Assembly: GCA_025594325.1 (NCBI GenBank)
Contig: JANHCV010000002.1
Span: 1,736,001-1,800,000, forward strand
Reading direction: 5' to 3'
DNA length: 64,000 nucleotides
Source of the DNA: Blastocladiella emersonii ATCC 22665
Lineage: Eukaryota; Fungi; Blastocladiomycota
Of this stretch, positions 318-9,918 are shown piece after piece. Position 1 is the stretch's first letter. The number at the start of each line of letters is the position of its first letter. Made by a program: the position numbers and the translations under genes. The notes beneath the pieces were generated by a model. The model was not told where the DNA came from, did no database searches, and saw nothing but the letters and a program-made list of their open reading frames with translations.

Positions 318-2558
318 ATGAATCGATCGTACACGCCGCCGCGGCAGTGGCAGCTGAAATGCCCCAAGGAGCTCGAGGAGGACCTGCACGCCGCGCTGCA
401 GCTCCGGCTGTTCATCGTGCAGGAGTTTGGGCCCCTCAAGTTTGCCGTCCGCGACGGCGAGGGACAGGTGTTCCACGTCGTCCTCGGGTCCGTCAATGGA
501 TGACCGCATCGTCAGGCGAGTGAGTAGTTGACGTCTTGCTGCCTGGTTAGCACGCAGCACCAGTGTTCGTGCATCACGGAGGCCAGTAAAGAGGCCTCAT
601 GTAAGTTGCTCTGCCGCCACATCATCTGGTCGCTGCATCGGCGGCTTCGGATCGCCGAGTCCTCGCCGCTGCTGTACCAGAGCGGGCTCGCCGAGCACGA
701 GCTGTCGCGATTGACCGTTCCCTCGGGCGGTGTCGTGAGGTAAGCTAACTGCCTCGAGCGGCTTCATTCTTTGACTGACCGAGTGCTATCCCGGACGTAG
801 GAAGGGCAAGGCGAGAGCTACCTCGGCCTCGAAGAGCAAGTCGAGTTCGGTGCAGCAAAAGCCCATCACCGAGGACGATGTGTGGTACGGCCGACTAAAG
901 AGTCGTCTCGCGCAGTGGCATCTTGACTCACGCAGGGCTTGCCGAGTGTAGCCCGATCTGCCAGGAGACGTTCGTGAGCAGCACCACGCCCGTATGCTAC
1001 TGCCGCGGGAGCTGCGGCAACAACGTCCACGTCCCGTGCATGAAGCTCGTCGCCGAGCACCAGGTCAAGGCCATGGGCCGCGAAACGGTCGCTTGTCCGG
1101 TACGGCTGTCGATTCTGTCGTTGGTGGCACCAACAATTGAGCTCGCTTTGTTCGTCCGTGTAGTTGTGCCGCGCCGACTTCGGTCCCATCGAGGAGCTCG
1201 AGCAGCTCGACAAGGACTGGGAGCGCGAGCGCCGCGCGCAGACCATGAACAAGCGCACCAGCAAGACCGTCGCCCGGCTGCACGTCGGCGTCTACTGCCG
1301 CGGGTGCAGCTCGGCTGTCCGCGGCCGCTGCTATCGATGCACTGAGTGTGAGGTACATCTCTGTCTTGCTGTTGAACCATGCCACAACTGACCAACGTCA
1401 ACATGGTAGTCGTACGCGCTGTGCTCTGGGTGCTTTGACGATGGTCTCCACCGCGAGCATCCGTTCCAGTTCAAGGACGACCCCAAGGCGCCGTTCTGGG
1501 CCGTCGCTACGCGATGTACGTTTTCGAAGTCGGCCACGCGTTGCCTCGCACCGCTCACTCTCCGCACTGCGGCATTTTAGATCTCAAACCCGAGTTGTCC
1601 GAGTCCGAAGCCGCGGCGCTGCAGGTGCGTCGATCCTCATTCGTGGTCGGTGGTCGATGGTTGAGGCACTAACCACTCTTCCGTATAGTCTCGAGACCTC
1701 ACGGACGCCGACTACCAGGTGCTCACGAGCCTCGACCAGCCCAAGTCGATCCAGGGCTACCCGCGCCTGCACGCCGTGAACACGCTCCCGCTCATTCAGA
1801 TCCCGCGCTCCATGGGTCCTGCCGCCGACGGTTCCGACAGCAACACGAGCCAATGCCACGTCTGCCTAGCTGATCTCGTGGCCGGCGAGACGGTTCGCCG
1901 ACTGCCCTGCTCGCACTCTCGCTTCCACCACGACTGCGTCGACCGCTGGCTCATCCAGAACTCGACCCGCTGCCCCGAGTGTTCCGAGCACGTCCTCATC
2001 GAGCTCGCTGATCGGCCGGGCTTCTGTACGTCATCTAACGCATCATGATCGCCACGCGCCGGAAGCTCACGGATTCGTCGTGTAGTCGTGCCAGCTGAGG
2101 CCACCATCGAGCGCGACGACGAGGGTTACTCGTCGTTCACGCGGCGGCTCGAGGCCATGGTCATTGCTCGGCGCAGCAAGCCAAGAACGCGTCGCCCGGA
2201 GCGCATCGAGTCGGGTACGGGTTCTACCGCTCGGAAAGCAGCGCAGCAGCCGCTCAAGCGCGGCGCGACCAGCAGTGTCCCGGAGCTTCCTCCGCTTTTT
2301 GCCTCGCTTCTGATCGTGAGCGCGGCCGGTACAGCCGGTGGCCACGCGCATCCAACTGGCTCCGCGACTCGTTCGAGCACCACCACACCGTCGATGGCCG
2401 TGGCTGTAGCACGGTCTGGTCGGTCGCGCTCGACCAGGACAGGGCTGCCGACTACGCCCGTGCCGAGCGAGGTGAGCGCGACCTTGGAGCTTTCGGGATC
2501 TGCTCTGACGGTGGCCCTTCCGCGTATCGTGTGCTCCACGTCTCGACGAGGCGCGTGA
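318..2558 (+). CDS. ZSWIM2: E3 ubiquitin ligase ZSWIM2/MEX-like (SWIM-RING-ZZ-RING), multi-exon
   Basis: Spliced exons give a SWIM motif (CSC...CRH), a RING (CPICQE...[13 protein letters not shown]...CP), a ZZ finger ([18 protein letters not shown]) and a RING-H2 (CHVCLADL...[17 protein letters not shown]...CPEC), in the ZSWIM2 order. GT-AG introns are visible between them. Confidence 0.85.
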
Positions 2559-2863
2559 AAGTGCATAAATATAAGTAGATCCACGCGTCAAAGGGCTCGC
2601 CATCGATTTCAACGTGTATCACGGCTGTGAGACGCGACGCGACGCGTCGCGGTGGGGTGGTGGGAGACATCCCCGACGTTCGTCTCGCAGCATACGGCGC
2701 GCGCAAGTTCATGCGGGATTCGAGGCGCTCGATTGTCTGTGCGGCTCCTAAGCTCTGGAACTCTCGATGCAAGACGTAGGCGGAGTTCCTGAGCGCGACG
2801 CGCTGGTTCTCCGACCTCCGCGCTCGCCCGGTCCCTCGCTCCCCTACCCCACCACCACCCGCC

Positions 2864-5800
2864 ATGGCTGCAATACTGCGGCGCGCGTCTGAGCGCATCC
2901 ATGAACACTTTGAGAACAATGTATTCCTGCCCGACTCGAACCGGCTGCAGCAGCAGCGGTCCCTGACGCTGGCCGCCTCGGTCGTGCACCTGGTCAAGGC
3001 TCCGCTCGACGCGTCGTTCGACGACACGCCGCTCCCGCCCGCGGCGTACGCTGCCCTCGAGATTGGACTGGCCATCGTGTTCGTCATCGACATCATCGTC
3101 AACTTCAACGCGGCGTACCACGACGCCGCGGGCCAGCTCGTCAAGGACCCGCGGCTGATTCGCCGCCACTACCTGCGCACGCGGTTCCCGATCCACCTCG
3201 CCGCCATCCTGCCCTACGCCTACGTCCTGCGACCATGGGCCCCGCACCCGCTCGTCGCCTTCTCCAAGCTTGCCGCGTTTCTCCACCTGCACCGATGGTG
3301 GAAAACGGTCCAGGAGCGCGAGCTGTCCATCAACGCGTCGCGCCGCTACACCATGACCATCCTCTTCATCTTCGTCCTGCTCGTAACGCACTGGATATCC
3401 TGCTGGTGGTGGGTCCTGCAGTGGTGGATTCGCGACAATCCCGTCTCGTGGGCGCGCAAGAACGCGCACGCCGACATGTTCGACGCCCACTTCGACAACA
3501 ACGACTATGCGCGCTACCCGTACCTCATCAACTTTGTCGTCAACAGTACGTGAGCCAGCTTACCCGCGCGCGCCATGGTCTCCGGCCACTAACCCGGAAG
3601 CGCTCCTCGTGTGTAGCCATGACCATGCCCGGCCACGGGTTCTGGAAAGCGACCAACAACGTCGAGACGATCTGTGCTGCGGGTATCGCCTGGACGGGAT
3701 CAATCATCGTCTTCATCTACCTGGTACGGGCGCGGGAACCTGGTGATCGAGCCGTGCTGACGTCGGCCGTCGCTTGAGTAGGCAGTCTTCATCTCGTACC
3801 TGGCCAACACCATCGAGGAACGCAGCAAGTTCGAGCAGGAGGTGACGTGGGTCCGAGAGTACATGGCCGACCGTGGCCTGTCCTTCGAGGCGCAGGACCG
3901 CGTCGTCGAGTACTACCAGTCCATGTGGGATCGAAATCATGGCCACGTCTCGCACGGCCATCTGTTTGAGGATCTCCCCGTGGCGCTCCGCGCCGAGGTC
4001 ATGTACAAAGTGTCGGGACCGATTCTCGAGACGGTACGCGCACATGGCCCGCTACTCGGCGGCGGCGAACAGCTCACTAACGATTGCTTCGCTCCGTGTA
4101 GATCCCCATGTTCGCGTGCTGCAGCCTCACGTTCCGACGAATGCTCGCGCTCCGCATGAAGGAGGTCGTCTTCACGCCCGGCGAGGCCATCATCCGCAAG
4201 GGCGACTCGGGCAAGGAAATGTACCTGATCAAGTCGGGCCACGCGCAGGTCGTCTCGGACGATCTGTCGCGCGTCTGGGCCGACCTTGAGGACGGCGCGT
4301 ATTTCGGTACGCGCTCATGGCACGTCCAGGTCCAGCACCGCTGGCTCACGTTTCTCCTGCATCTAGGTGAGCTCGCGCTCTTCAAGAACCAGCCGCGCAT
4401 GACGACCGTGGTCGCCGCGCTCGAGACCGAGGTCCTGATCCTGACGCGCGACGACATCATGGACGTGTTCAAGGCGTTCCCCGACGACGCGGATCTCGTC
4501 ATGGCCGCGGCCAACGAGCGCTACATCGAGGTCAACCGCAAGAACTCGGTGATGCGCAAGAACCCGCTCCTGGCCAAGACGTTCCTGTTCCGCAACGTTG
4601 CCGTCGTCGACTCGGCGTCCGCGTCGCACGTCACGCTCCCGACGGGCCGCAGTATTGATGCGTCGGACCTGGCCTCGTCCAACAGTCTGAGCGGATCCGA
4701 CCCGCCATCCACGGCGTCGAGTTCACCGCGGCTCGCAAATGCAACCGGTTTGTCGACGGCCTCGCTCTTCGTCATGCCGAAACCGTCATCTCGGCGCGGT
4801 CCCGGTATGCCGATGCGGGCCAGCGGGACCTCGAGTGCGTGGCTCGCCGTGGCCTCGTACGGCGCCCTCAACGGGTCGCGGCCGGGCTCGCGGCCAGGGT
4901 CTCGGCCAGGGTCTCGGCCCGGATCCAACGGTCAGCTCAAGCAGTCGGCGCCGAAACTCAACAACTTCCTCGCGCCGCCCAGCCCGTCGTCCGCGTACGG
5001 CACGATCCGCCAGGGCCTCAACCAGCTCGCCAACAGCGCCGTTGTCGAGCCCATCATGCGCCGTCTGACGCTGCGCCACGTACACTTCCGCAACGCGACC
5101 ATCAAAAAGGAACCGTCCGAGTCCGAGACCAGCTCGCGCACGTCCGTCGACGATGCGCACGGCGGCAGCGTGTACCTGTCCCCAACGGGCGCCTTGTCGC
5201 CGCAGCAGTCCATGAACGGAGCCTTCTCGCCACCAACAGCCGGGCGTCGTAGTCCGCGCCGCATGACCATTTTCAACCGATTCACAACCCTGTCGCCGTC
5301 ACCAGCTGCGTCCGCATTCACGACCCCGGCTCAAACGCCGTCGGCAAGTGCTCTCCGACTCACGACGCCCGCCTCGCCGTCAAACTCAGCGATTGCCGCG
5401 CCCGCGTTCGTGTCCGCCTCGCCGTCACCGCTCCTGTCCACGCAGCAGCTCGACCAGGAAGCTGCCGGTTCTTCGGCGCCATCATCCTCGGCGGGCCCCA
5501 CCCCGATCCCGCTCGAAACCACCACCCCCGTCGCGGTCGTGTCCCGCCAACCGTCGACGCGGGCCAGCCGGCGGGGAAGCGCCGCAGCGCACCACGGCAC
5601 GTCGCCGCGCCGGCAAAGCTCGCTCGCGACGCTGCGCCAGCTCGTGCGCGAGTACCTGCGCCGCGACAACGACACCACGCACAACTCGGGATCCGGGCTC
5701 ATCTCGCCGGTTCCGGGCACGGTGCGGCGGTCTTCGCAGCGCGAGGGCGGGACCGAGTCGTCGGACGTGTCGCTCGACGAGTCGCGCCGCAACGTGTTCC

Positions 5801-6966
5801 TGTTCCCGCGCACGCCGCCGTCGCGCGGCCAGCCCGCGCTCGAGTCGGTGCCAGACAGCTCCGAGTTTGGCGATGAGTACATCCCGCCGCCAACCTCGCT
5901 CCCTGGGCCAGCTGGAAAACTGGTCCGCTCATCGTCGGTCCTGTCCTCGATTGGCGCGTTGCCCATCATGCCGGCTCCCGCGGCCGGCGTGCCCAGCGCC
6001 ATGGCCCGCAGGAGCTCCATCTCGACCGACCCTGCTCGGATGCGCGATGCCGGCAACAAGCCGCCACCCGCGCGACGCGCGTCCATGGCTCCTTTGATAC
6101 CCGGAACGATTGCCGAGCAATCGACCTCAACCATTGCGCGGCCGTCGTCTGTGGTGTCCTCGGAGCGCTCCGTCGTTCCCGCACCAGCGCCATCACTGGC
6201 TCCCGCAGAACGTCCCGTCGCCGCGGCGCCGGCGCCAAGTTTGCCGCTCGAGCACGACGTCGTGGTCTCCATCACGCCGGGCTCCATGACCCGCTCCGAC
6301 GACGACAGCGCCTCGCTCAACTTTATCAAGGAGACGGTGCTTGCGACGCGCGACGAGGCCATGCTTGACGACTCGCTCGGGTCGCTAACCACGGGCACGG
6401 GCACGGGAACGCCGCTCGACTCGAGCTTTTCATCGCGCATGCAGACGGCCGTCTCGTCGAACAACGCGAGTCTGTACCCGCACCGCACCACGGACCGCGA
6501 CCTGAGCTTGGCCTCGCCGACGACGCTCTCCACCATCAACAGCTCGCCGCGGCCCCCGCCGCCGCCGATCCAGTGGCACCGGCCGTCGCGGCCGTCGCTG
6601 CAGTCGATCCGCGACTACTACTCGCCCCGCACCGAGGCATCCACGTCGCTCCCGTGGGAGAGCGAGCAGCGCCGGCCGTCGCCGGCCATCAACTCGGCCG
6701 CGCGGCCGGGCACGCTCACGCTGTCCCAGAGCAGCTTCCACTCGGCCACGAGCACTCCTGCTCTCGACGCGGCGCCCGCAACGTCCGCATCCCGACTCGA
6801 TGCACACGAGGAGGAGGACACGGATCCCACACCGCTACCCGCGCCGCTCACCGCGAGCAGGCGGCACGAGTCCGTGTTCTTCAGCGCGGCGGGCTCGCTG
6901 CGGTCGGCGGCCAGCGTGTCCACTGATGGCGGCGGCGACGTCTTTTACACTGCGCCTGATGGCTGA
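2864..6966 (+). CDS. Cyclic-nucleotide-gated/KCNH-like 6TM cation channel, paralog 1, with a long disordered C-tail
   Basis: S1-S6 hydrophobic segments, a pore region (after removing intron 3546-3616) VNTMTMPGHGFW, a C-linker (REYMADRGLS...RVVEYYQSMW) and a CNBD (FTPGEAIIRKGDSGKEMYLIKSG...FGELALF...PRMTTV). The last ~750 aa are Ser/Pro-rich. ORF 4108-6966 contains an in-frame 60-nt intron. Confidence 0.9.
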
Positions 6967-7155
6967 AATCACTAGATCTATTGTTTTTGCAACTTCATGA
7001 AACCAACCTGCGAGAGAAACCCGATAGGCACCGCCGCCGCGTCCCTGCGCGCGAGCTGGGAGACACGGAGAATGGAAGGTTCCTCGAGCTCCCGTCTTGC
7101 GCTCGCAGAGCTCCCTCTTTACGCCGGCACTCCATGTGCACCCGATCAATCGGAG

Positions 7156-9918
7156 ATGAAAACAATGCAGTCAATGAAATGGATAGCCCGGCTCCGGCGG
7201 CTTACAGAGGATAAGCCAATTGTGCCGGGCAGCAGAGCCGACACCTTTTTCCAGTGGATCGGGTTCCTGGCGGCCACGGCCGAGTTGTGTTATGTACCGT
7301 TCGAGGTGGTCTTTGGCCTCGAGATCGCCAGGACTCCTGCTCTGAGTGCCGTGGTGGGCATCGCGCGTGTCGCCATCGCGGCCTGCATCGCGGCGGAGTT
7401 CGTGACGGCCTACTGGAGCGCCGAGAAGCAGCTCGTGCGCGACGCGACGCTCATCCGACGGCACTACCTGCGCGGCAAGTTCCCCATCCACGTCGTCGCT
7501 ATCTTCCCGTGGGACCGCATCGCCGACGCGATCTCCGGGCCGACGCGCAGTATCCCACTGCTGTTCCGGCTCCTGCACTTTCAGCGATGGACAAAGTTCC
7601 TGCGGCACCACTTTACGTCGCCACGCTCGCAGCGGTCGGCCGAGAGTGGGCTGTTACTGCTCCTATTCTTTGTCGTCGTCCACTGGCTGTCGTGCGTATG
7701 GTGGGGCGCACAGCAGCTCATCGGCTCCTCGTACCCCGAAACGTGGACCAAGATCACGTTCGGCGACCATGGCCACGCCGACGCTGCCGCCAGCTATCTC
7801 CGCTCCTGGCTATTTACCATCAATTGTCCGTCCGTCTTACGATGTTAATCGCCGTTTGTGCAGTTGCTCTTGCTCACGACCCAGATTGCTATTCTCACTT
7901 GCGTAGGCGTGACCATGCCCGGCTTTGGAGTGTGGAAAGCAAAGAACCCGGTCGAGACCTGGCTCAGCCTCAGCATCTTGCTCGTTGGCGCGGGCGAGAT
8001 GGTCCTCTCGTGGGTACGCGGTACTCGCTCACCTCACCGACCGTCTCTCATCATGGCCATGTGTAGATCATCGTGGCCGAGCTCATTATCAACGGCGTCA
8101 AGGAGCAGCACATGATCATGCTCGAGCTCGAGAGCGTGCTGCGATACATGCACGAGCACAAGGTTGCGGTCGAAGCGCAGGACCGCGCTCGCGTGTACTA
8201 CCGAATCCTGTGGAAACGGTTCAAGGGCTACCACCGTACATCGTGGATCCATGAACTGCCGCAGTGCTTCCAGACCGAGCTCGCGTACTTGATGCGCTGC
8301 GACCTGCTCCGCAAGGTCCCGCTGTTTGCGCAGTCCAACGATCTCGCGTTTCTCCGCATGCTCGCGTCGGTCGTGCAGGAGACGGTCTTTGCGCCCGGAG
8401 AGTACATTGTCCGGCGAGGAGATGTCGGCCGCGAGATGTTTCTGGTACGCTTGATGCTGCTCTCGTGGTGCTCAGGTCGCTAACTCCTCGCGCTGGTGAC
8501 TAGATCAAGTACGGCATAGTCCAGTTCATCACCGAGGACGGGGAATACGTCCAGAGCGAGCTCGAGGCTGGCGACTTTTTCGGTACTCGCTTCCGCAACT
8601 CGGCTGCCCGCACGCATCACGGCCACTGACCGCGGCCACCGCCCATGTAGGCGAAAAGGAGCTCTTCAACGACCGCCGGCGCGACGAGGACGTGGTCACG
8701 GCCACCGAGTGCCTCATGTACGTTCTCACGCGCGACAACCTCGAGAAGGTGTACAAGGTGTATCCCGCGGAGCGCACGGCCATGGACAAGCACGTGGAGC
8801 GGCGGCTCAGCGACGCCATGATGAAAGCGCCGCCGCCACCGCTCATGCCGACCACGCTCTTCCGCCGCGCCTCCGTCATGGTCCCGCCCGGCGGCGGCGG
8901 AAGCCCCATGGACGGCAGCGGCGCGCTCCCCAGCTTCCCGCACCTTGGCGCGTCGCCGGCCTCGCCCATGGCCAGCTTGTCGCGGCGCATGTCCATCTTC
9001 CCCGGCGCTATGGGCGGAAGAGATGCGCCGCCACCCGGATTCCAGCACCTCGGCGCGCCTACAGCCTCGCCCATGGCCAGTCTCTCGCGTCGCATGTCGA
9101 TCTTCCCCAGCACCGCTCCGGCCGGCGTTCTCCCGCTCCCCATGTCGCCGCTCCTCGGCAAGAACCTGTCGCTCCCGCGCACCGTGTCGCCGATCCCGTC
9201 CAACACGACGCTCGCCGGGAGCACCGGTCTCTCGATCCCGCCGTCGCGTGTCGAGTCCAACGCCTCGTCCATGGCCGAGGCGGGTCTGGGCACGACGACG
9301 GCGCTGCACTCGGCGCCGGGCTCGCCGCGCGCCGCACACTGCTCGCCGCTGTCGAGCATCATCGTGCCCGCGGGCACGTCGAGCCGCCGCAGCTCCATGT
9401 TGGTGTCGTCCTCGTCCGCGTCGCCGTCGCGCCGGAGCTCCATGGCCGCGACCACGTCGCCGCGGGCCGTCGAGTCGCTGCCGCGCCGCGGGACCACGTC
9501 GGGCTCCATCACTCCGCCACCCTTGGCGGCCACGTCGCCACCTCCTGTCGTCTCGCCGCGCGAGAGCGCGTCCAGCGGCGGCGCGCACAGCCCGCGGCTC
9601 GCGGCGCGCGCCTCGGTTTCGGCGCAGGCGGCGATCGAGGGGATCGCGCAGTGGCTAAGGACGGCGCCGAGTCTCGCAATGGGCGGCGGTGGCGGGTCGT
9701 CGTCGCCGCCGAATGAAGCTGCCGAGGCTGGTGCGACAGTCGCAGCTGGCGCGCGGCCGCCGCCGATTCGGCCTCTCGCGGAACGCTCGTGGTCGTCGGC
9801 GACGGCCGGGAGCGAGACGGCGCCGCTGGTCCGGATGATGTCGCGCGTCCAGAGCGTTGAGGCGGGGAGCAGAGCTGGCGGGGCGGTTCCAAGGGACGAG
9901 GAGAAGGCTGAACCATAG
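7156..9918 (+). CDS. CNG/KCNH-like channel, tandem paralog 2 (start codon uncertain, 7156 or 7174)
   Basis: Same architecture and several shared intron positions with paralog 1. Pore region INCVTMPGFGVW, C-linker (LRYMHEHKV...YYRILW), CNBD (FAPGEYIVRRGDVGREMFL|IKYG...FFGEKELF). Ser/Pro-rich tail. Confidence 0.85.

What the first reader, a model, noticed from the sequence alone, without database searches (positions are those of the whole stretch)
3540..7935. Tandem CNG-type channels share a non-canonical selectivity filter T-M-P-G-[H/F]-G
Seen: after splicing, the pore loops read VNTMTMPGHGFW (paralog 1) and INCVTMPGFGVW (paralog 2). Established: K+/HCN/KCNH/CNGK channels use TT[V/I]G[Y/F]GD. 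Here a proline replaces V/I, the following Asp is lost and one copy has His for Tyr. Both diverged paralogs keep TMPG-x-G-x-W, which argues for selection rather than decay. Inference: a channel subfamily with altered selectivity (non-selective cation, Ca2+ or H+) or a non-conducting pore, possibly linked to blastocladian cGMP zoospore signalling (BeGC1/BeCNG1 is the known system).
Basis: partly seen in the sequence, partly recalled or inferred. Interest (0 to 1): 0.75.

Follow-up and report, generated by a model that had tools for sequence, protein, structure and literature searches.

The report
Fungal channel clade with proline pore filter
Two neighbouring ion-channel genes of the water mould Blastocladiella emersonii belong to a channel group, so far seen only in its phylum, in which a proline sits inside the normally invariant potassium-filter motif, so these channels may let through different ions than their known relative BeCNG1.

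Summary
After splicing at consensus sites, gene 1 (window 2864-6966) reads N-T-M-T-M-P-G-H-G-F-W and gene 2 (7156-9918) reads N-C-V-T-M-P-G-F-G-V-W. No alternative exon restores a canonical filter.

The genome is Blastocladiella emersonii ATCC 22665. A third linked copy, H9P43_002516 (S-A-P-G-Y-G), lies 4.4 kb upstream of gene 1, outside the window.

The closest relatives that could be named are all Blastocladiomycota:
- Group A, which holds both window genes: T-M-P-G-Y-G in Allomyces and Coelomomyces, V-V-P-G-Q-G in Catenaria.
- Group B: T-V-P-G-[YF]-A-D in four genera, including a B. emersonii gene on contig 18.

Among 357 other pore domains from the 150 best database hits, none has a proline before G-x-G. 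The BeCNG1-like gene (T-T-T-G-Y-G-D, contig 19) falls outside the clade.

The pore loop is the best-kept stretch between the two genes (12 of 17 residues). However, gene 1's Catenaria sister and two B. britannica members have lost the glycines, so the filter is not conserved throughout group A.

Fold and sequence place the clade in the CNG/HCN/KCNH superfamily, with a charge-poor S4.

Ion selectivity, ligand and expression were not tested, and no RNA run was listed. I rate it a new variant of a known kind. The scan's first readers had already noted the upstream and T-V-P-G-F-A-D copies on other DNA of this genome.

The parts
2864..3545 (+). Gene 1 exon 1: N-terminus, S1-S5 and pore helix, up to the Asn before the filter. 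S4 is charge-poor (K-L-A-A-F-L-H-L-H-R-W-W-K).
   Evidence: ORF. Aligns to profile positions 14-226 of the P0001/P0002 profile. 45% identical to Catenaria ORZ31587. Pfam Ion_trans was not detected on this piece alone.
3546..3616 (+). Gene 1 intron 1 (71 nt, GTACGT..CTAAC..TAG, phase 1). The same position is used in gene 2, in H9P43_002516 and in the contig-18 T-V-P-G-F-A-D gene.
3617..3723 (+). Gene 1 exon 2: selectivity-filter loop and S6. The filter codons T-M-P-G-H-G are at 3622-3639.
3782..4033 (+). Gene 1 exon 3: end of S6 and C-linker.
   Evidence: Profile positions 263-343. tblastn with P0002 and P0036.
4102..4306 (+). Gene 1 exon 4: first half of the cyclic-nucleotide-binding domain.
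   Evidence: Pfam PF00027, 30.4 bits (cut-off 27.5), model positions 2-51.
4307..4366 (+). Gene 1 intron 4 (60 nt, in frame, no stop). Removing it joins Y-F-G to E-L-A-L-F.
   Evidence: The Pfam model resumes at position 53 directly after it. Splice signals. Gene 2 has an intron at the same position.
4367..6966 (+). Gene 1 exon 5: second half of the CNBD (phosphate-binding cassette P-R-M-T-T-V-V-A), then a Ser/Pro-rich tail of about 800 residues. Stop codon at 6964-6966.
7156..7825 (+). Gene 2 exon 1: S1-S5 and pore helix. The start codon is taken as the ATG at 7156; in-frame ATGs at 6997 and 7072 are also possible.
7826..7906 (+). Gene 2 intron 1 (81 nt, GTCCGT..CTCAC..TAG, phase 1).
7907..8013 (+). 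Gene 2 exon 2: filter loop and S6. The filter codons T-M-P-G-F-G are at 7912-7929. S6 contains a Glu (G-A-G-E-M).
8067..8444 (+). Gene 2 exon 3: C-linker and start of the CNBD.
8504..8582 (+). Gene 2 exon 4: middle of the CNBD beta-roll.
8651..9918 (+). Gene 2 exon 5: rest of the CNBD with an acidic phosphate-binding cassette (R-R-R-D-E-D-V-V), then a disordered tail. Stop codon at 9916-9918.

Best explanation
Gene 1 and gene 2 are intact genes for subunits of tetrameric six-helix cation channels that carry a C-linker and a cyclic-nucleotide-binding domain (the CNG/HCN/KCNH superfamily).

They are two of three old, linked paralogs in B. emersonii. They belong to a clade seen so far only in Blastocladiomycota. 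Its ancestral filter was a potassium-type signature changed to [T/S]-[M/V/A]-P-G-[Y/F]-[G/A]: the Thr that forms the innermost K+ site is hydrophobic, and the Val/Ile is a proline.

Inferred, not shown:
- Gating is by a cyclic nucleotide and not by voltage, because S4 has only one to three basic residues.
- The altered filter holds fewer ordered K+ sites, so the pore is a weakly selective cation pathway (like HCN or NaK) and not a strict K+ channel like BeCNG1. In group A the filter has also lost the stabilising Asp and the pore-helix Trp.
- Tyr became His in gene 1 (TAC to CAC) and Phe in gene 2 (TAT to TTT), each a single-base change from the ancestral Tyr.
- Gene 2 has an acidic phosphate-binding cassette, a very diverged S6 and a long branch. 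It is the likeliest to act as a modulatory subunit in heteromers with its neighbours.
For: Identity and architecture:
- Pfam cNMP_binding is split across exons 4 and 5 of gene 1.
- The exon pieces align colinearly to the P0001/P0002 profile.
- That profile matches TAX-4 (179 bits), HCN1/4, SthK, CNGA1/3, hERG and GORK over S2 to the CNBD.
- The AlphaFold model of the upstream paralog's core has mean pLDDT 86, with six membrane helices, a pore helix, a C-linker and a beta-roll. Its best Foldseek matches are CNGA1/B1, HCN4, GORK and hERG.

Clade:
- A tree of S1-S5, built without the pore columns, gives group A 100/100, group B 99/97 and A+B 96/92. The BeCNG1-like gene groups with Synchytrium outside the clade.
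- All named close relatives are Blastocladiomycota.
- The intron just before the filter is shared by group A and group B genes in B. emersonii.

Filter:
- Pro-G is present in 9 of the 12 clade proteins retrieved from databases, in both window genes and in the contig-18 gene.
- None of 357 pore domains outside the clade has Pro before G-x-G.
- The pore loop is the most conserved stretch between gene 1 and gene 2.

S4 and cassette alignments.
Against: - No RNA evidence for either gene. Neither product was found in the protein collections searched.
- Pfam Ion_trans did not reach threshold on the exon pieces.
- Nothing here measures ion selectivity, ligand binding or assembly. Backbone carbonyls, including that of proline, could still build K+ sites, so K+ selectivity is not excluded.
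- Loss of the glycines in Catenaria ORZ31587 and in two B. britannica members shows that some clade members do not need a K+-type filter. This fits a non-conducting role as well as it fits altered selectivity.
- The A+B grouping is not resolved by the C-linker tree.
- Only the 150 best hits of the large search were visible, so weaker members in other phyla could have been missed.
Confidence: 0.6

Rival explanations
1. These are ordinary K+-selective cyclic-nucleotide-gated channels. The proline keeps its carbonyl in the filter, and the G-x-G backbone still forms K+ sites, so the proteins are functional equivalents of BeCNG1.
For: The ancestral form keeps G-Y-G (Allomyces, Coelomomyces, H9P43_002516). 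Group B keeps the pore-helix Y-W and the Asp after the filter. From general knowledge, K+ sites S1-S3 are built from backbone carbonyls.
Against: The Thr whose hydroxyl forms the innermost site is Met, Val or Ala throughout the clade. The Asp and the pore-helix Trp are lost in group A. The Tyr is His in gene 1, Phe in gene 2 and Gln in a Catenaria protein. No proline occurs at this site in 208 G-x-G filters of related channels.
Confidence: 0.2
2. The proteins are non-conducting or purely modulatory subunits. Gene 2, and perhaps gene 1, cannot form a pore alone and act only within heteromers, for example with H9P43_002516, in the way CNGB or silent Kv subunits do. Alternatively they act as cyclic-nucleotide sensors without ion flow.
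For: Gene 2 has the longest branch in group A (1.75), an acidic R-D-E-D cassette and an S6 only 2 of 18 identical to gene 1. Sister lineages lost the filter glycines completely. The three copies are linked on one contig.
Against: The pore loop is the best-conserved segment between gene 1 and gene 2, at 12 of 17 residues. That would not be expected if the pore were irrelevant. Assembly was not tested.
Confidence: 0.17
3. The genes are decaying pseudogenes, or the filter is an artefact of assembly or of wrong splicing.
For: There is no transcript evidence, and no matching protein in public collections.
Against: Both genes have five exons with open frames of 1281 and about 833 codons. All eight introns have consensus signals. 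The exon structure matches an annotated paralog. The motif is shared with other genera. No alternative exon encodes a canonical filter.
Confidence: 0.03

Closest known systems
BeCNG1, the cGMP-gated K+ channel of Blastocladiella emersonii (Avelar et al. 2014, PMC4046227)
   Same: Same organism and same superfamily: six membrane helices, C-linker and CNBD, in a single repeat.
   Different: BeCNG1 carries the G-Y-G-D signature (PMC4046227). The probable BeCNG1 locus on contig 19 reads T-M-T-T-T-G-Y-G-D, has its intron inside the filter codons, and groups with Synchytrium homologs outside the proline-filter clade.
Animal CNG channels (TAX-4, CNGA1/CNGB1)
   Same: Best sequence match among solved structures (TAX-4, 179 bits) and best fold match (CNGA1/B1). 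S4 is charge-poor. The upstream paralog and the Allomyces protein have an R-T-A-N cassette like CNGA.
   Different: The CNG filter is T-I-G-E followed by prolines, with a Glu ring and no Tyr-Gly. Here the filter is T-M-P-G-x-G with no acidic residue. In the alignment the proline falls on the Ile of T-I-G-E.
HCN channels (filter C-I-G-Y-G)
   Same: A K+-type filter in which the innermost Thr is replaced, which goes with weak K+/Na+ selectivity (general knowledge). Similar full-length alignment.
   Different: HCN keeps Ile-Gly-Tyr-Gly and a long, highly charged S4. The clade has Pro and a charge-poor S4.
Four-repeat CNGK-type channels (sperm CNGK and its protist relatives)
   Same: These were the strongest whole-protein hits of the large search. 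Each of their repeats has S1-S6 plus a CNBD.
   Different: They are single chains of four repeats with canonical T-[TS]-[VT]-G-Y-G-D filters. The window genes are single-repeat proteins.

Membership tests
CNBD-channel superfamily (CNG/HCN/KCNH; Pfam Ion_trans PF00520 plus cNMP_binding PF00027) | Cyclic-nucleotide-binding beta-roll C-terminal to the pore | tested here: met
   Gene 1 exon 4 hits PF00027 at 30.4 bits (cut-off 27.5), and exon 5 continues the model. Gene 2's CNBD exons (3-5) align to the same profile columns.
CNBD-channel superfamily (CNG/HCN/KCNH; Pfam Ion_trans PF00520 plus cNMP_binding PF00027) | Six membrane helices with a pore helix between S5 and S6 | tested here: inconclusive
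   PF00520 was not detected on the exon-1 pieces alone. However, exon 1 of each gene aligns over the S1-S5 columns (gene 1 up to the pore helix) of a profile that matches TAX-4 and HCN1. The modelled paralog P0002 shows S1-S6 and a pore helix. P0001 carries PF00520 as a precomputed hit. The spliced window proteins themselves were not folded.
CNBD-channel superfamily (CNG/HCN/KCNH; Pfam Ion_trans PF00520 plus cNMP_binding PF00027) | Conserved Arg of the phosphate-binding cassette (G-E-x-A-L ... R-[TS]-A) | tested here: met
   The Arg is present in both genes, but the residues after it are unusual: R-M-T-T in gene 1 and R-D-E-D in gene 2. The rest of the clade has R-T-[AT]-[NTS].
K+-selective channels (signature T-x-x-T-[VI]-G-[YF]-G) | Thr-Val/Ile-Gly-Tyr/Phe-Gly filter | tested here: not met
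   Gene 1 has T-M-P-G-H-G and gene 2 has T-M-P-G-F-G. Met replaces the Thr and Pro replaces the Val/Ile in gapless alignment.
BeCNG1 orthologs | G-Y-G-D filter, and phylogenetic grouping with BeCNG1 and its chytrid homologs | tested here: not met
   In the S1-S5 tree the contig-19 gene groups with Synchytrium (99/97), outside the 13-row proline-filter clade (96/92).
Animal-type CNG channels | Filter T-I-G-E with a Glu ring | tested here: not met
   There is no acidic residue in the filter.
HCN channels | C-I-G-Y-G filter and an S4 with many regularly spaced basic residues | tested here: not met
   The filter differs, and S4 has only one to three basic residues.
Blastocladiomycota proline-filter clade (defined here) | Pro directly before G-x-[G/A] in the filter, the phase-1 intron after the pore-helix Asn, and grouping in the S1-S5 tree | tested here: met

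The most novel reading that the evidence does not exclude
The proline-filter clade is a new selectivity class within the CNBD channels. In particular, a gene 1 tetramer would place a ring of four histidines (G-H-G, followed by F-W) at the outer filter. That could make a cyclic-nucleotide-gated pore that conducts protons, or that is gated by pH or Zn2+. It would give zoospores a depolarising or pH-signalling partner to the hyperpolarising BeCNG1.
Probability: 0.1. Interest if true: 0.85.

Novelty: new variant of a known kind. Interest (0 to 1): 0.6.

Why it matters
The T-V-G-Y-G filter is one of the most conserved motifs in biology. Natural departures from it, as in HCN, NaK and CNG channels, have been the main guides to how selectivity works.

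A proline at the Val/Ile position, kept across at least four genera of one fungal phylum, is a natural experiment that was not seen in any of 208 related G-x-G filters sampled here. No paper in the library searched contains these motif strings.

B. emersonii is also the source of the optogenetic tools BeCyclOp and BeCNG1. A cyclic-nucleotide-gated channel from the same organism with a different ion preference could extend that tool set. It could also reveal a second, non-K+ branch of zoospore cyclic-nucleotide signalling.

The repeated complete loss of the filter inside the same clade raises the question of what such 'poreless' CNBD channels do.

Tried and rejected
- **RNA evidence.** The look-up of sequencing runs listed no run for window 2800-8500. 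Its cap is one search, so read laying could not be used.
- **Public annotation context.** The look-up of encoding contigs returned nothing for P0002. Whether genes 1 and 2 are annotated in GenBank could not be settled. None of the returned proteins is more than 48% identical to the window region.
- **Pfam on exon pieces.** This gave only the CNBD. In that call the gene 2 pore exon was sent one base out of frame (7908 instead of 7909). It was re-read correctly.
- **Word-index searches.**
  - The first, with gene 1's open frame, found only the Allomyces protein.
  - The third, with the clade alignment, hit the 8000-candidate limit and added only a Chytriomyces protein with an unrelated, degenerate pore.
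- **C-linker tree.** One row (Be_C18_groupB) was cut in the wrong frame and must be ignored. That tree confirms group A (100/99) but does not resolve A+B.
- **Gene conversion.** Rejected as the reason for the shared motif. DNA identity in the pore half is 37 of 51, with third positions 10 of 17 identical.
- **One fused two-repeat gene.** Considered and judged unlikely. Gene 2's open frame is in the same frame as gene 1 and about 190 nt downstream (to the ATG at 7156). Two stops lie between them, and the only GT..AG pair that would remove them spans about 36 nt with a poor donor.
- **Other B. emersonii CNBD-channel loci with glycine-free pores** (contig 1 at 4.996 Mb, contig 11 at 2.627 Mb). 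They score only 15-88 bits per piece against the clade profile and were not counted as members.
  - Exons were searched and aligned one by one by reference.
  - The annotated paralog P0002 stood in for structure prediction.
  - The full-length fold of the window proteins is therefore left out.
- **Complex prediction.** Not used. A homotetramer pass would not separate the rival explanations.


Full report
**What is in the window**

The region is GC-rich (about 65%) eukaryotic DNA with short introns. The window is contig 11, positions 1,736,001-1,800,000, of a 32.65-Mb, 21-contig assembly.

Protein P0002, annotated as H9P43_002516 of Blastocladiella emersonii ATCC 22665, is encoded at 100% identity just upstream of the window. 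It lies on a contig of the same length as the one recorded for that protein, 2,841,633 bases. The genome paper describes a 21-contig assembly of this strain (PMC9730499). So the organism is B. emersonii ATCC 22665.

**Gene models**

| | Gene 1 | Gene 2 |
|---|---|---|
| Exon 1 | 2864-3545 | 7156-7825 |
| Exon 2 | 3617-3723 | 7907-8013 |
| Exon 3 | 3782-4033 | 8067-8444 |
| Exon 4 | 4102-4306 | 8504-8582 |
| Exon 5 | 4367-6966 | 8651-9918 |
| Length | 1281 codons | about 833 codons |

All eight introns are 53-81 nt. Seven start GTAC and one GTCC, all end TAG, and a CTAAC-, CTGAC- or CTCAC-type branch site is visible in six.

Three lines of evidence support the models:
- The Pfam cNMP_binding model is split exactly across gene 1's 60-nt in-frame intron. 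Model positions 2-51 lie in exon 4 and 53-87 in exon 5.
- Every exon aligns colinearly to a profile of two annotated relatives.
- The annotated paralog P0002 has introns at the same two positions around its pore/S6 exon.

No RNA run could be listed, so the junctions are inferred, not observed.

**The filter**

Spliced, gene 1 reads N-T-M-T-M-P-G-H-G-F-W-K and gene 2 reads N-C-V-T-M-P-G-F-G-V-W-K.

In gapless alignment with canonical relatives (W-A-V-T-T-M-T-T-V-G-F-G-D), four things change:
- The proline falls on the Val/Ile.
- The Met falls on the Thr that forms the innermost K+ site.
- The His or Phe falls on the Tyr.
- The Phe or Val falls on the Asp.

The same register holds against TAX-4, where the proline meets the Ile of T-I-G-E.

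No other G-[YFHLW]-G is encoded in the coding frames of either pore region, so alternative splicing cannot restore a canonical filter. In the whole genome the back-translated motif occurs only at these two sites, and the control pattern occurs nowhere.

**Relatives**

A word search with gene 1's CNBD frame found one protein, Allomyces macrogynus AMAG_13663. Its pore reads A-V-T-M-P-G-Y-G-I-F-K.

A profile of that protein and P0002 was then scored against 1.84 billion representative proteins. The whole-protein ranking is led by four-repeat CNGK-type proteins. By single-domain score, the ten best after the two query proteins are single-repeat proteins. All ten carry NCBI names from Blastocladiomycota: Catenaria anguillulae, Blastocladiella britannica, Coelomomyces lativittatus and Allomyces arbusculus.

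They fall into two groups.

Group A:
- T-M-P-G-Y-G in Allomyces and Coelomomyces.
- S-A-P-G-Y-G in B. emersonii H9P43_002516.
- V-V-P-G-Q-G in Catenaria ORZ40726.
- Both window genes.
- Three members without the motif: Catenaria ORZ31587 (L-T-R-E-F-G-Y-T-W) and B. britannica P0069 and P0075, which have no glycine.

Group B:
- T-V-P-G-[Y/F]-A-D in Coelomomyces, A. arbusculus and B. britannica.
- A B. emersonii gene on contig 18. It reads N-L-V-T-V-P-G-F-A-D and has the same phase-1 intron just before the filter.

I fetched the Catenaria and B. britannica loci to check the three exceptions. The Catenaria pore lies in one uninterrupted exon, and the B. britannica pore exons use the conserved intron position. 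These losses are therefore real and not annotation errors.

Among 357 pore domains outside the clade in the same hit set, 208 of them with G-x-G, none has a proline before G-x-G. No paper in the searched library contains any of the motif strings.

**Phylogeny**

A maximum-likelihood tree of S1-S5 was cut before the filter, so the trait itself is excluded. It gives the following support:

| Grouping | Support (bootstrap / SH-aLRT) |
|---|---|
| Group A, nine rows including both window genes | 100/100 |
| Group B | 99/97 |
| A+B | 96/92 |
| Contig-19 gene (T-M-T-T-T-G-Y-G-D, probable BeCNG1) with Synchytrium, outside the clade | 99/97 |

Gene 1 pairs with Catenaria ORZ31587 (91/79). Gene 2 sits on a long branch at the base of group A. 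The linked copies are therefore old duplicates, 29-32% identical in exon 1, and not a recent tandem duplication.

A second tree from the C-linker and the start of the CNBD again gives group A 100/99 but leaves A+B unresolved. One row of that tree was mis-framed by me and must be ignored.

**Conservation**

Between gene 1 and gene 2 the pore-loop half of exon 2 is 12 of 17 identical. The S6 half is 2 of 18, and exon 1 is about 29%. Only the S2-S3 linker and the CNBD beta-roll come close.

At the DNA level the pore half is 37 of 51 identical, with third positions 10 of 17, so recent gene conversion is not the cause. This supports purifying selection on T-M-P-G-x-G-x-W-K in B. emersonii.

The three glycine-free members show that selection is not universal in group A.

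**Family and fold**

The clade profile matches the following solved structures from S2 to the end of the CNBD:
- TAX-4 at 179 bits.
- HCN1 and HCN4 at about 168 bits.
- SthK, CNGA1 and CNGA3, hERG, EAG, SKOR and GORK.

An AlphaFold model of the P0002 core has mean pLDDT 86. It shows six membrane helices, a pore helix, a short filter loop, a long S6 and C-linker, and a beta-roll. Its best Foldseek matches are CNGA1/B1, HCN4, GORK and hERG.

S4 is charge-poor throughout the clade. Group A shares an H-x-x-R-W motif.

The phosphate-binding cassette is R-T-[A/T]-[N/T/S] in the clade. It is R-M-T-T in gene 1 and R-D-E-D in gene 2.

**Mechanism**

Shown:
- The channel architecture.
- An intact CNBD in gene 1.
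- The altered filter and its conservation.

Inferred:
- Tetrameric assembly.
- Gating by ligand and not by voltage.
- A filter with fewer K+ sites. The reasons are the loss of the Thr hydroxyl, a proline that has no amide hydrogen, and, in group A, loss of the Asp and of the pore-helix Trp that brace the canonical filter.
- By analogy with HCN and NaK (general knowledge), weak selectivity among cations.

I put about 0.9 on the family and clade assignment and about 0.45 on reduced K+ selectivity. The rivals are ordinary K+ selectivity (0.2), non-conducting or modulatory subunits, most plausibly gene 2 (0.17), and pseudogene or artefact (0.03).

The subfamily idea is supported and extended: three linked copies, two groups and several genera. 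The selectivity and signalling ideas remain untested, and nothing links these genes to BeGC1/BeCNG1 beyond the shared organism.

First-stage notes of this scan had already flagged the upstream copy, the T-V-P-G-F-A-D gene and other atypical CNBD channels of this genome. I checked the first two myself.

**Limits**

- There are no transcripts, no functional data and no multimer model.
- The spliced window proteins were never sent as joined sequences. Their full-length fold is left out.
- Only the top 150 of 62,063 hits were visible, so weaker members in other phyla cannot be excluded.

Noticed in passing
G000:C11:1732477-1734423 (locus L010:3477-5423), about 4.4 kb upstream of gene 1 and outside the window: A third linked paralog, H9P43_002516 (P0002, 606 aa). 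Its filter is S-A-P-G-Y-G and its cassette is the CNG-like R-T-A-N. It has introns at the same positions around the pore/S6 exon.
   Followed up: yes
window 6964-7156: Gene 2's open frame (from 6997) is in the same reading frame as gene 1. It is separated from gene 1 by only TGA (6964) and TAG (6973), and the likely start at 7156 is about 190 nt after gene 1's stop. That is a very short intergenic space. Many distant relatives are fused two- or four-repeat channels.
   Followed up: partly
window 4307-4366: Gene 1 intron 4 is 60 nt, in frame and free of stops. If retained it would insert 20 residues into the CNBD beta-roll without breaking the frame.
   Followed up: partly
window 8651-8720 and 4367-4420: Gene 2's phosphate-binding cassette is acidic (R-R-R-D-E-D) and gene 1's reads R-M-T-T. 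Every other clade member has R-T-[A/T]-[N/T/S]. Gene 2 may not bind a cyclic nucleotide.
   Followed up: partly
window 4868-4925: There is a short tandem G-S-R-P repeat (four copies) in the long Ser/Pro-rich tail of gene 1. Both tails are long, about 800 and about 390 residues, and low in complexity.
   Followed up: no
window 900-2050: ORFs with Cys/His zinc-finger or RING-like patterns (for example C-S-H-x-F-H-x-x-C-x(n)-C-P-x-C at 1719-2048) lie between the upstream paralog and gene 1.
   Followed up: no
P0084, P0128, P0133 and P0165/P0167 (public annotations): Group B channels of Coelomomyces lativittatus and Allomyces arbusculus are named 'Kinesin-like protein kif27' in their NCBI records. 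This looks like a naming error by the annotation pipeline.
   Followed up: no
G000:C1:4996594-4997985 (L036/L047) and G000:C11:2627239-2628669 (L028/L041): These are further B. emersonii loci with S1-S6-like and CNBD matches. They are far more diverged, at 15-88 bits per piece. The contig-1 copy has a glycine-poor pore region (F-R-D-I-T-M-G-A-E-R). They are not members of the proline-filter clade.
   Followed up: partly
P0144, P0149, P0151, P0159 (large-search hits, unnamed): These four-repeat CNBD-bearing proteins have four pore loops that differ from one another, for example F-E-G-E-L-P, G-R-T-I-E-P, N-P-G-E-L and K-K-G-R-T-F. That is reminiscent of asymmetric four-domain cation channels.
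   Followed up: no
window 2864-9918: Neither gene product appears among the proteins returned by the word-index search or the 1.84-billion-representative search (best identity 48%), although the upstream paralog from the same genome does. The two genes may be missing or mis-modelled in the public annotation.
   Followed up: partly
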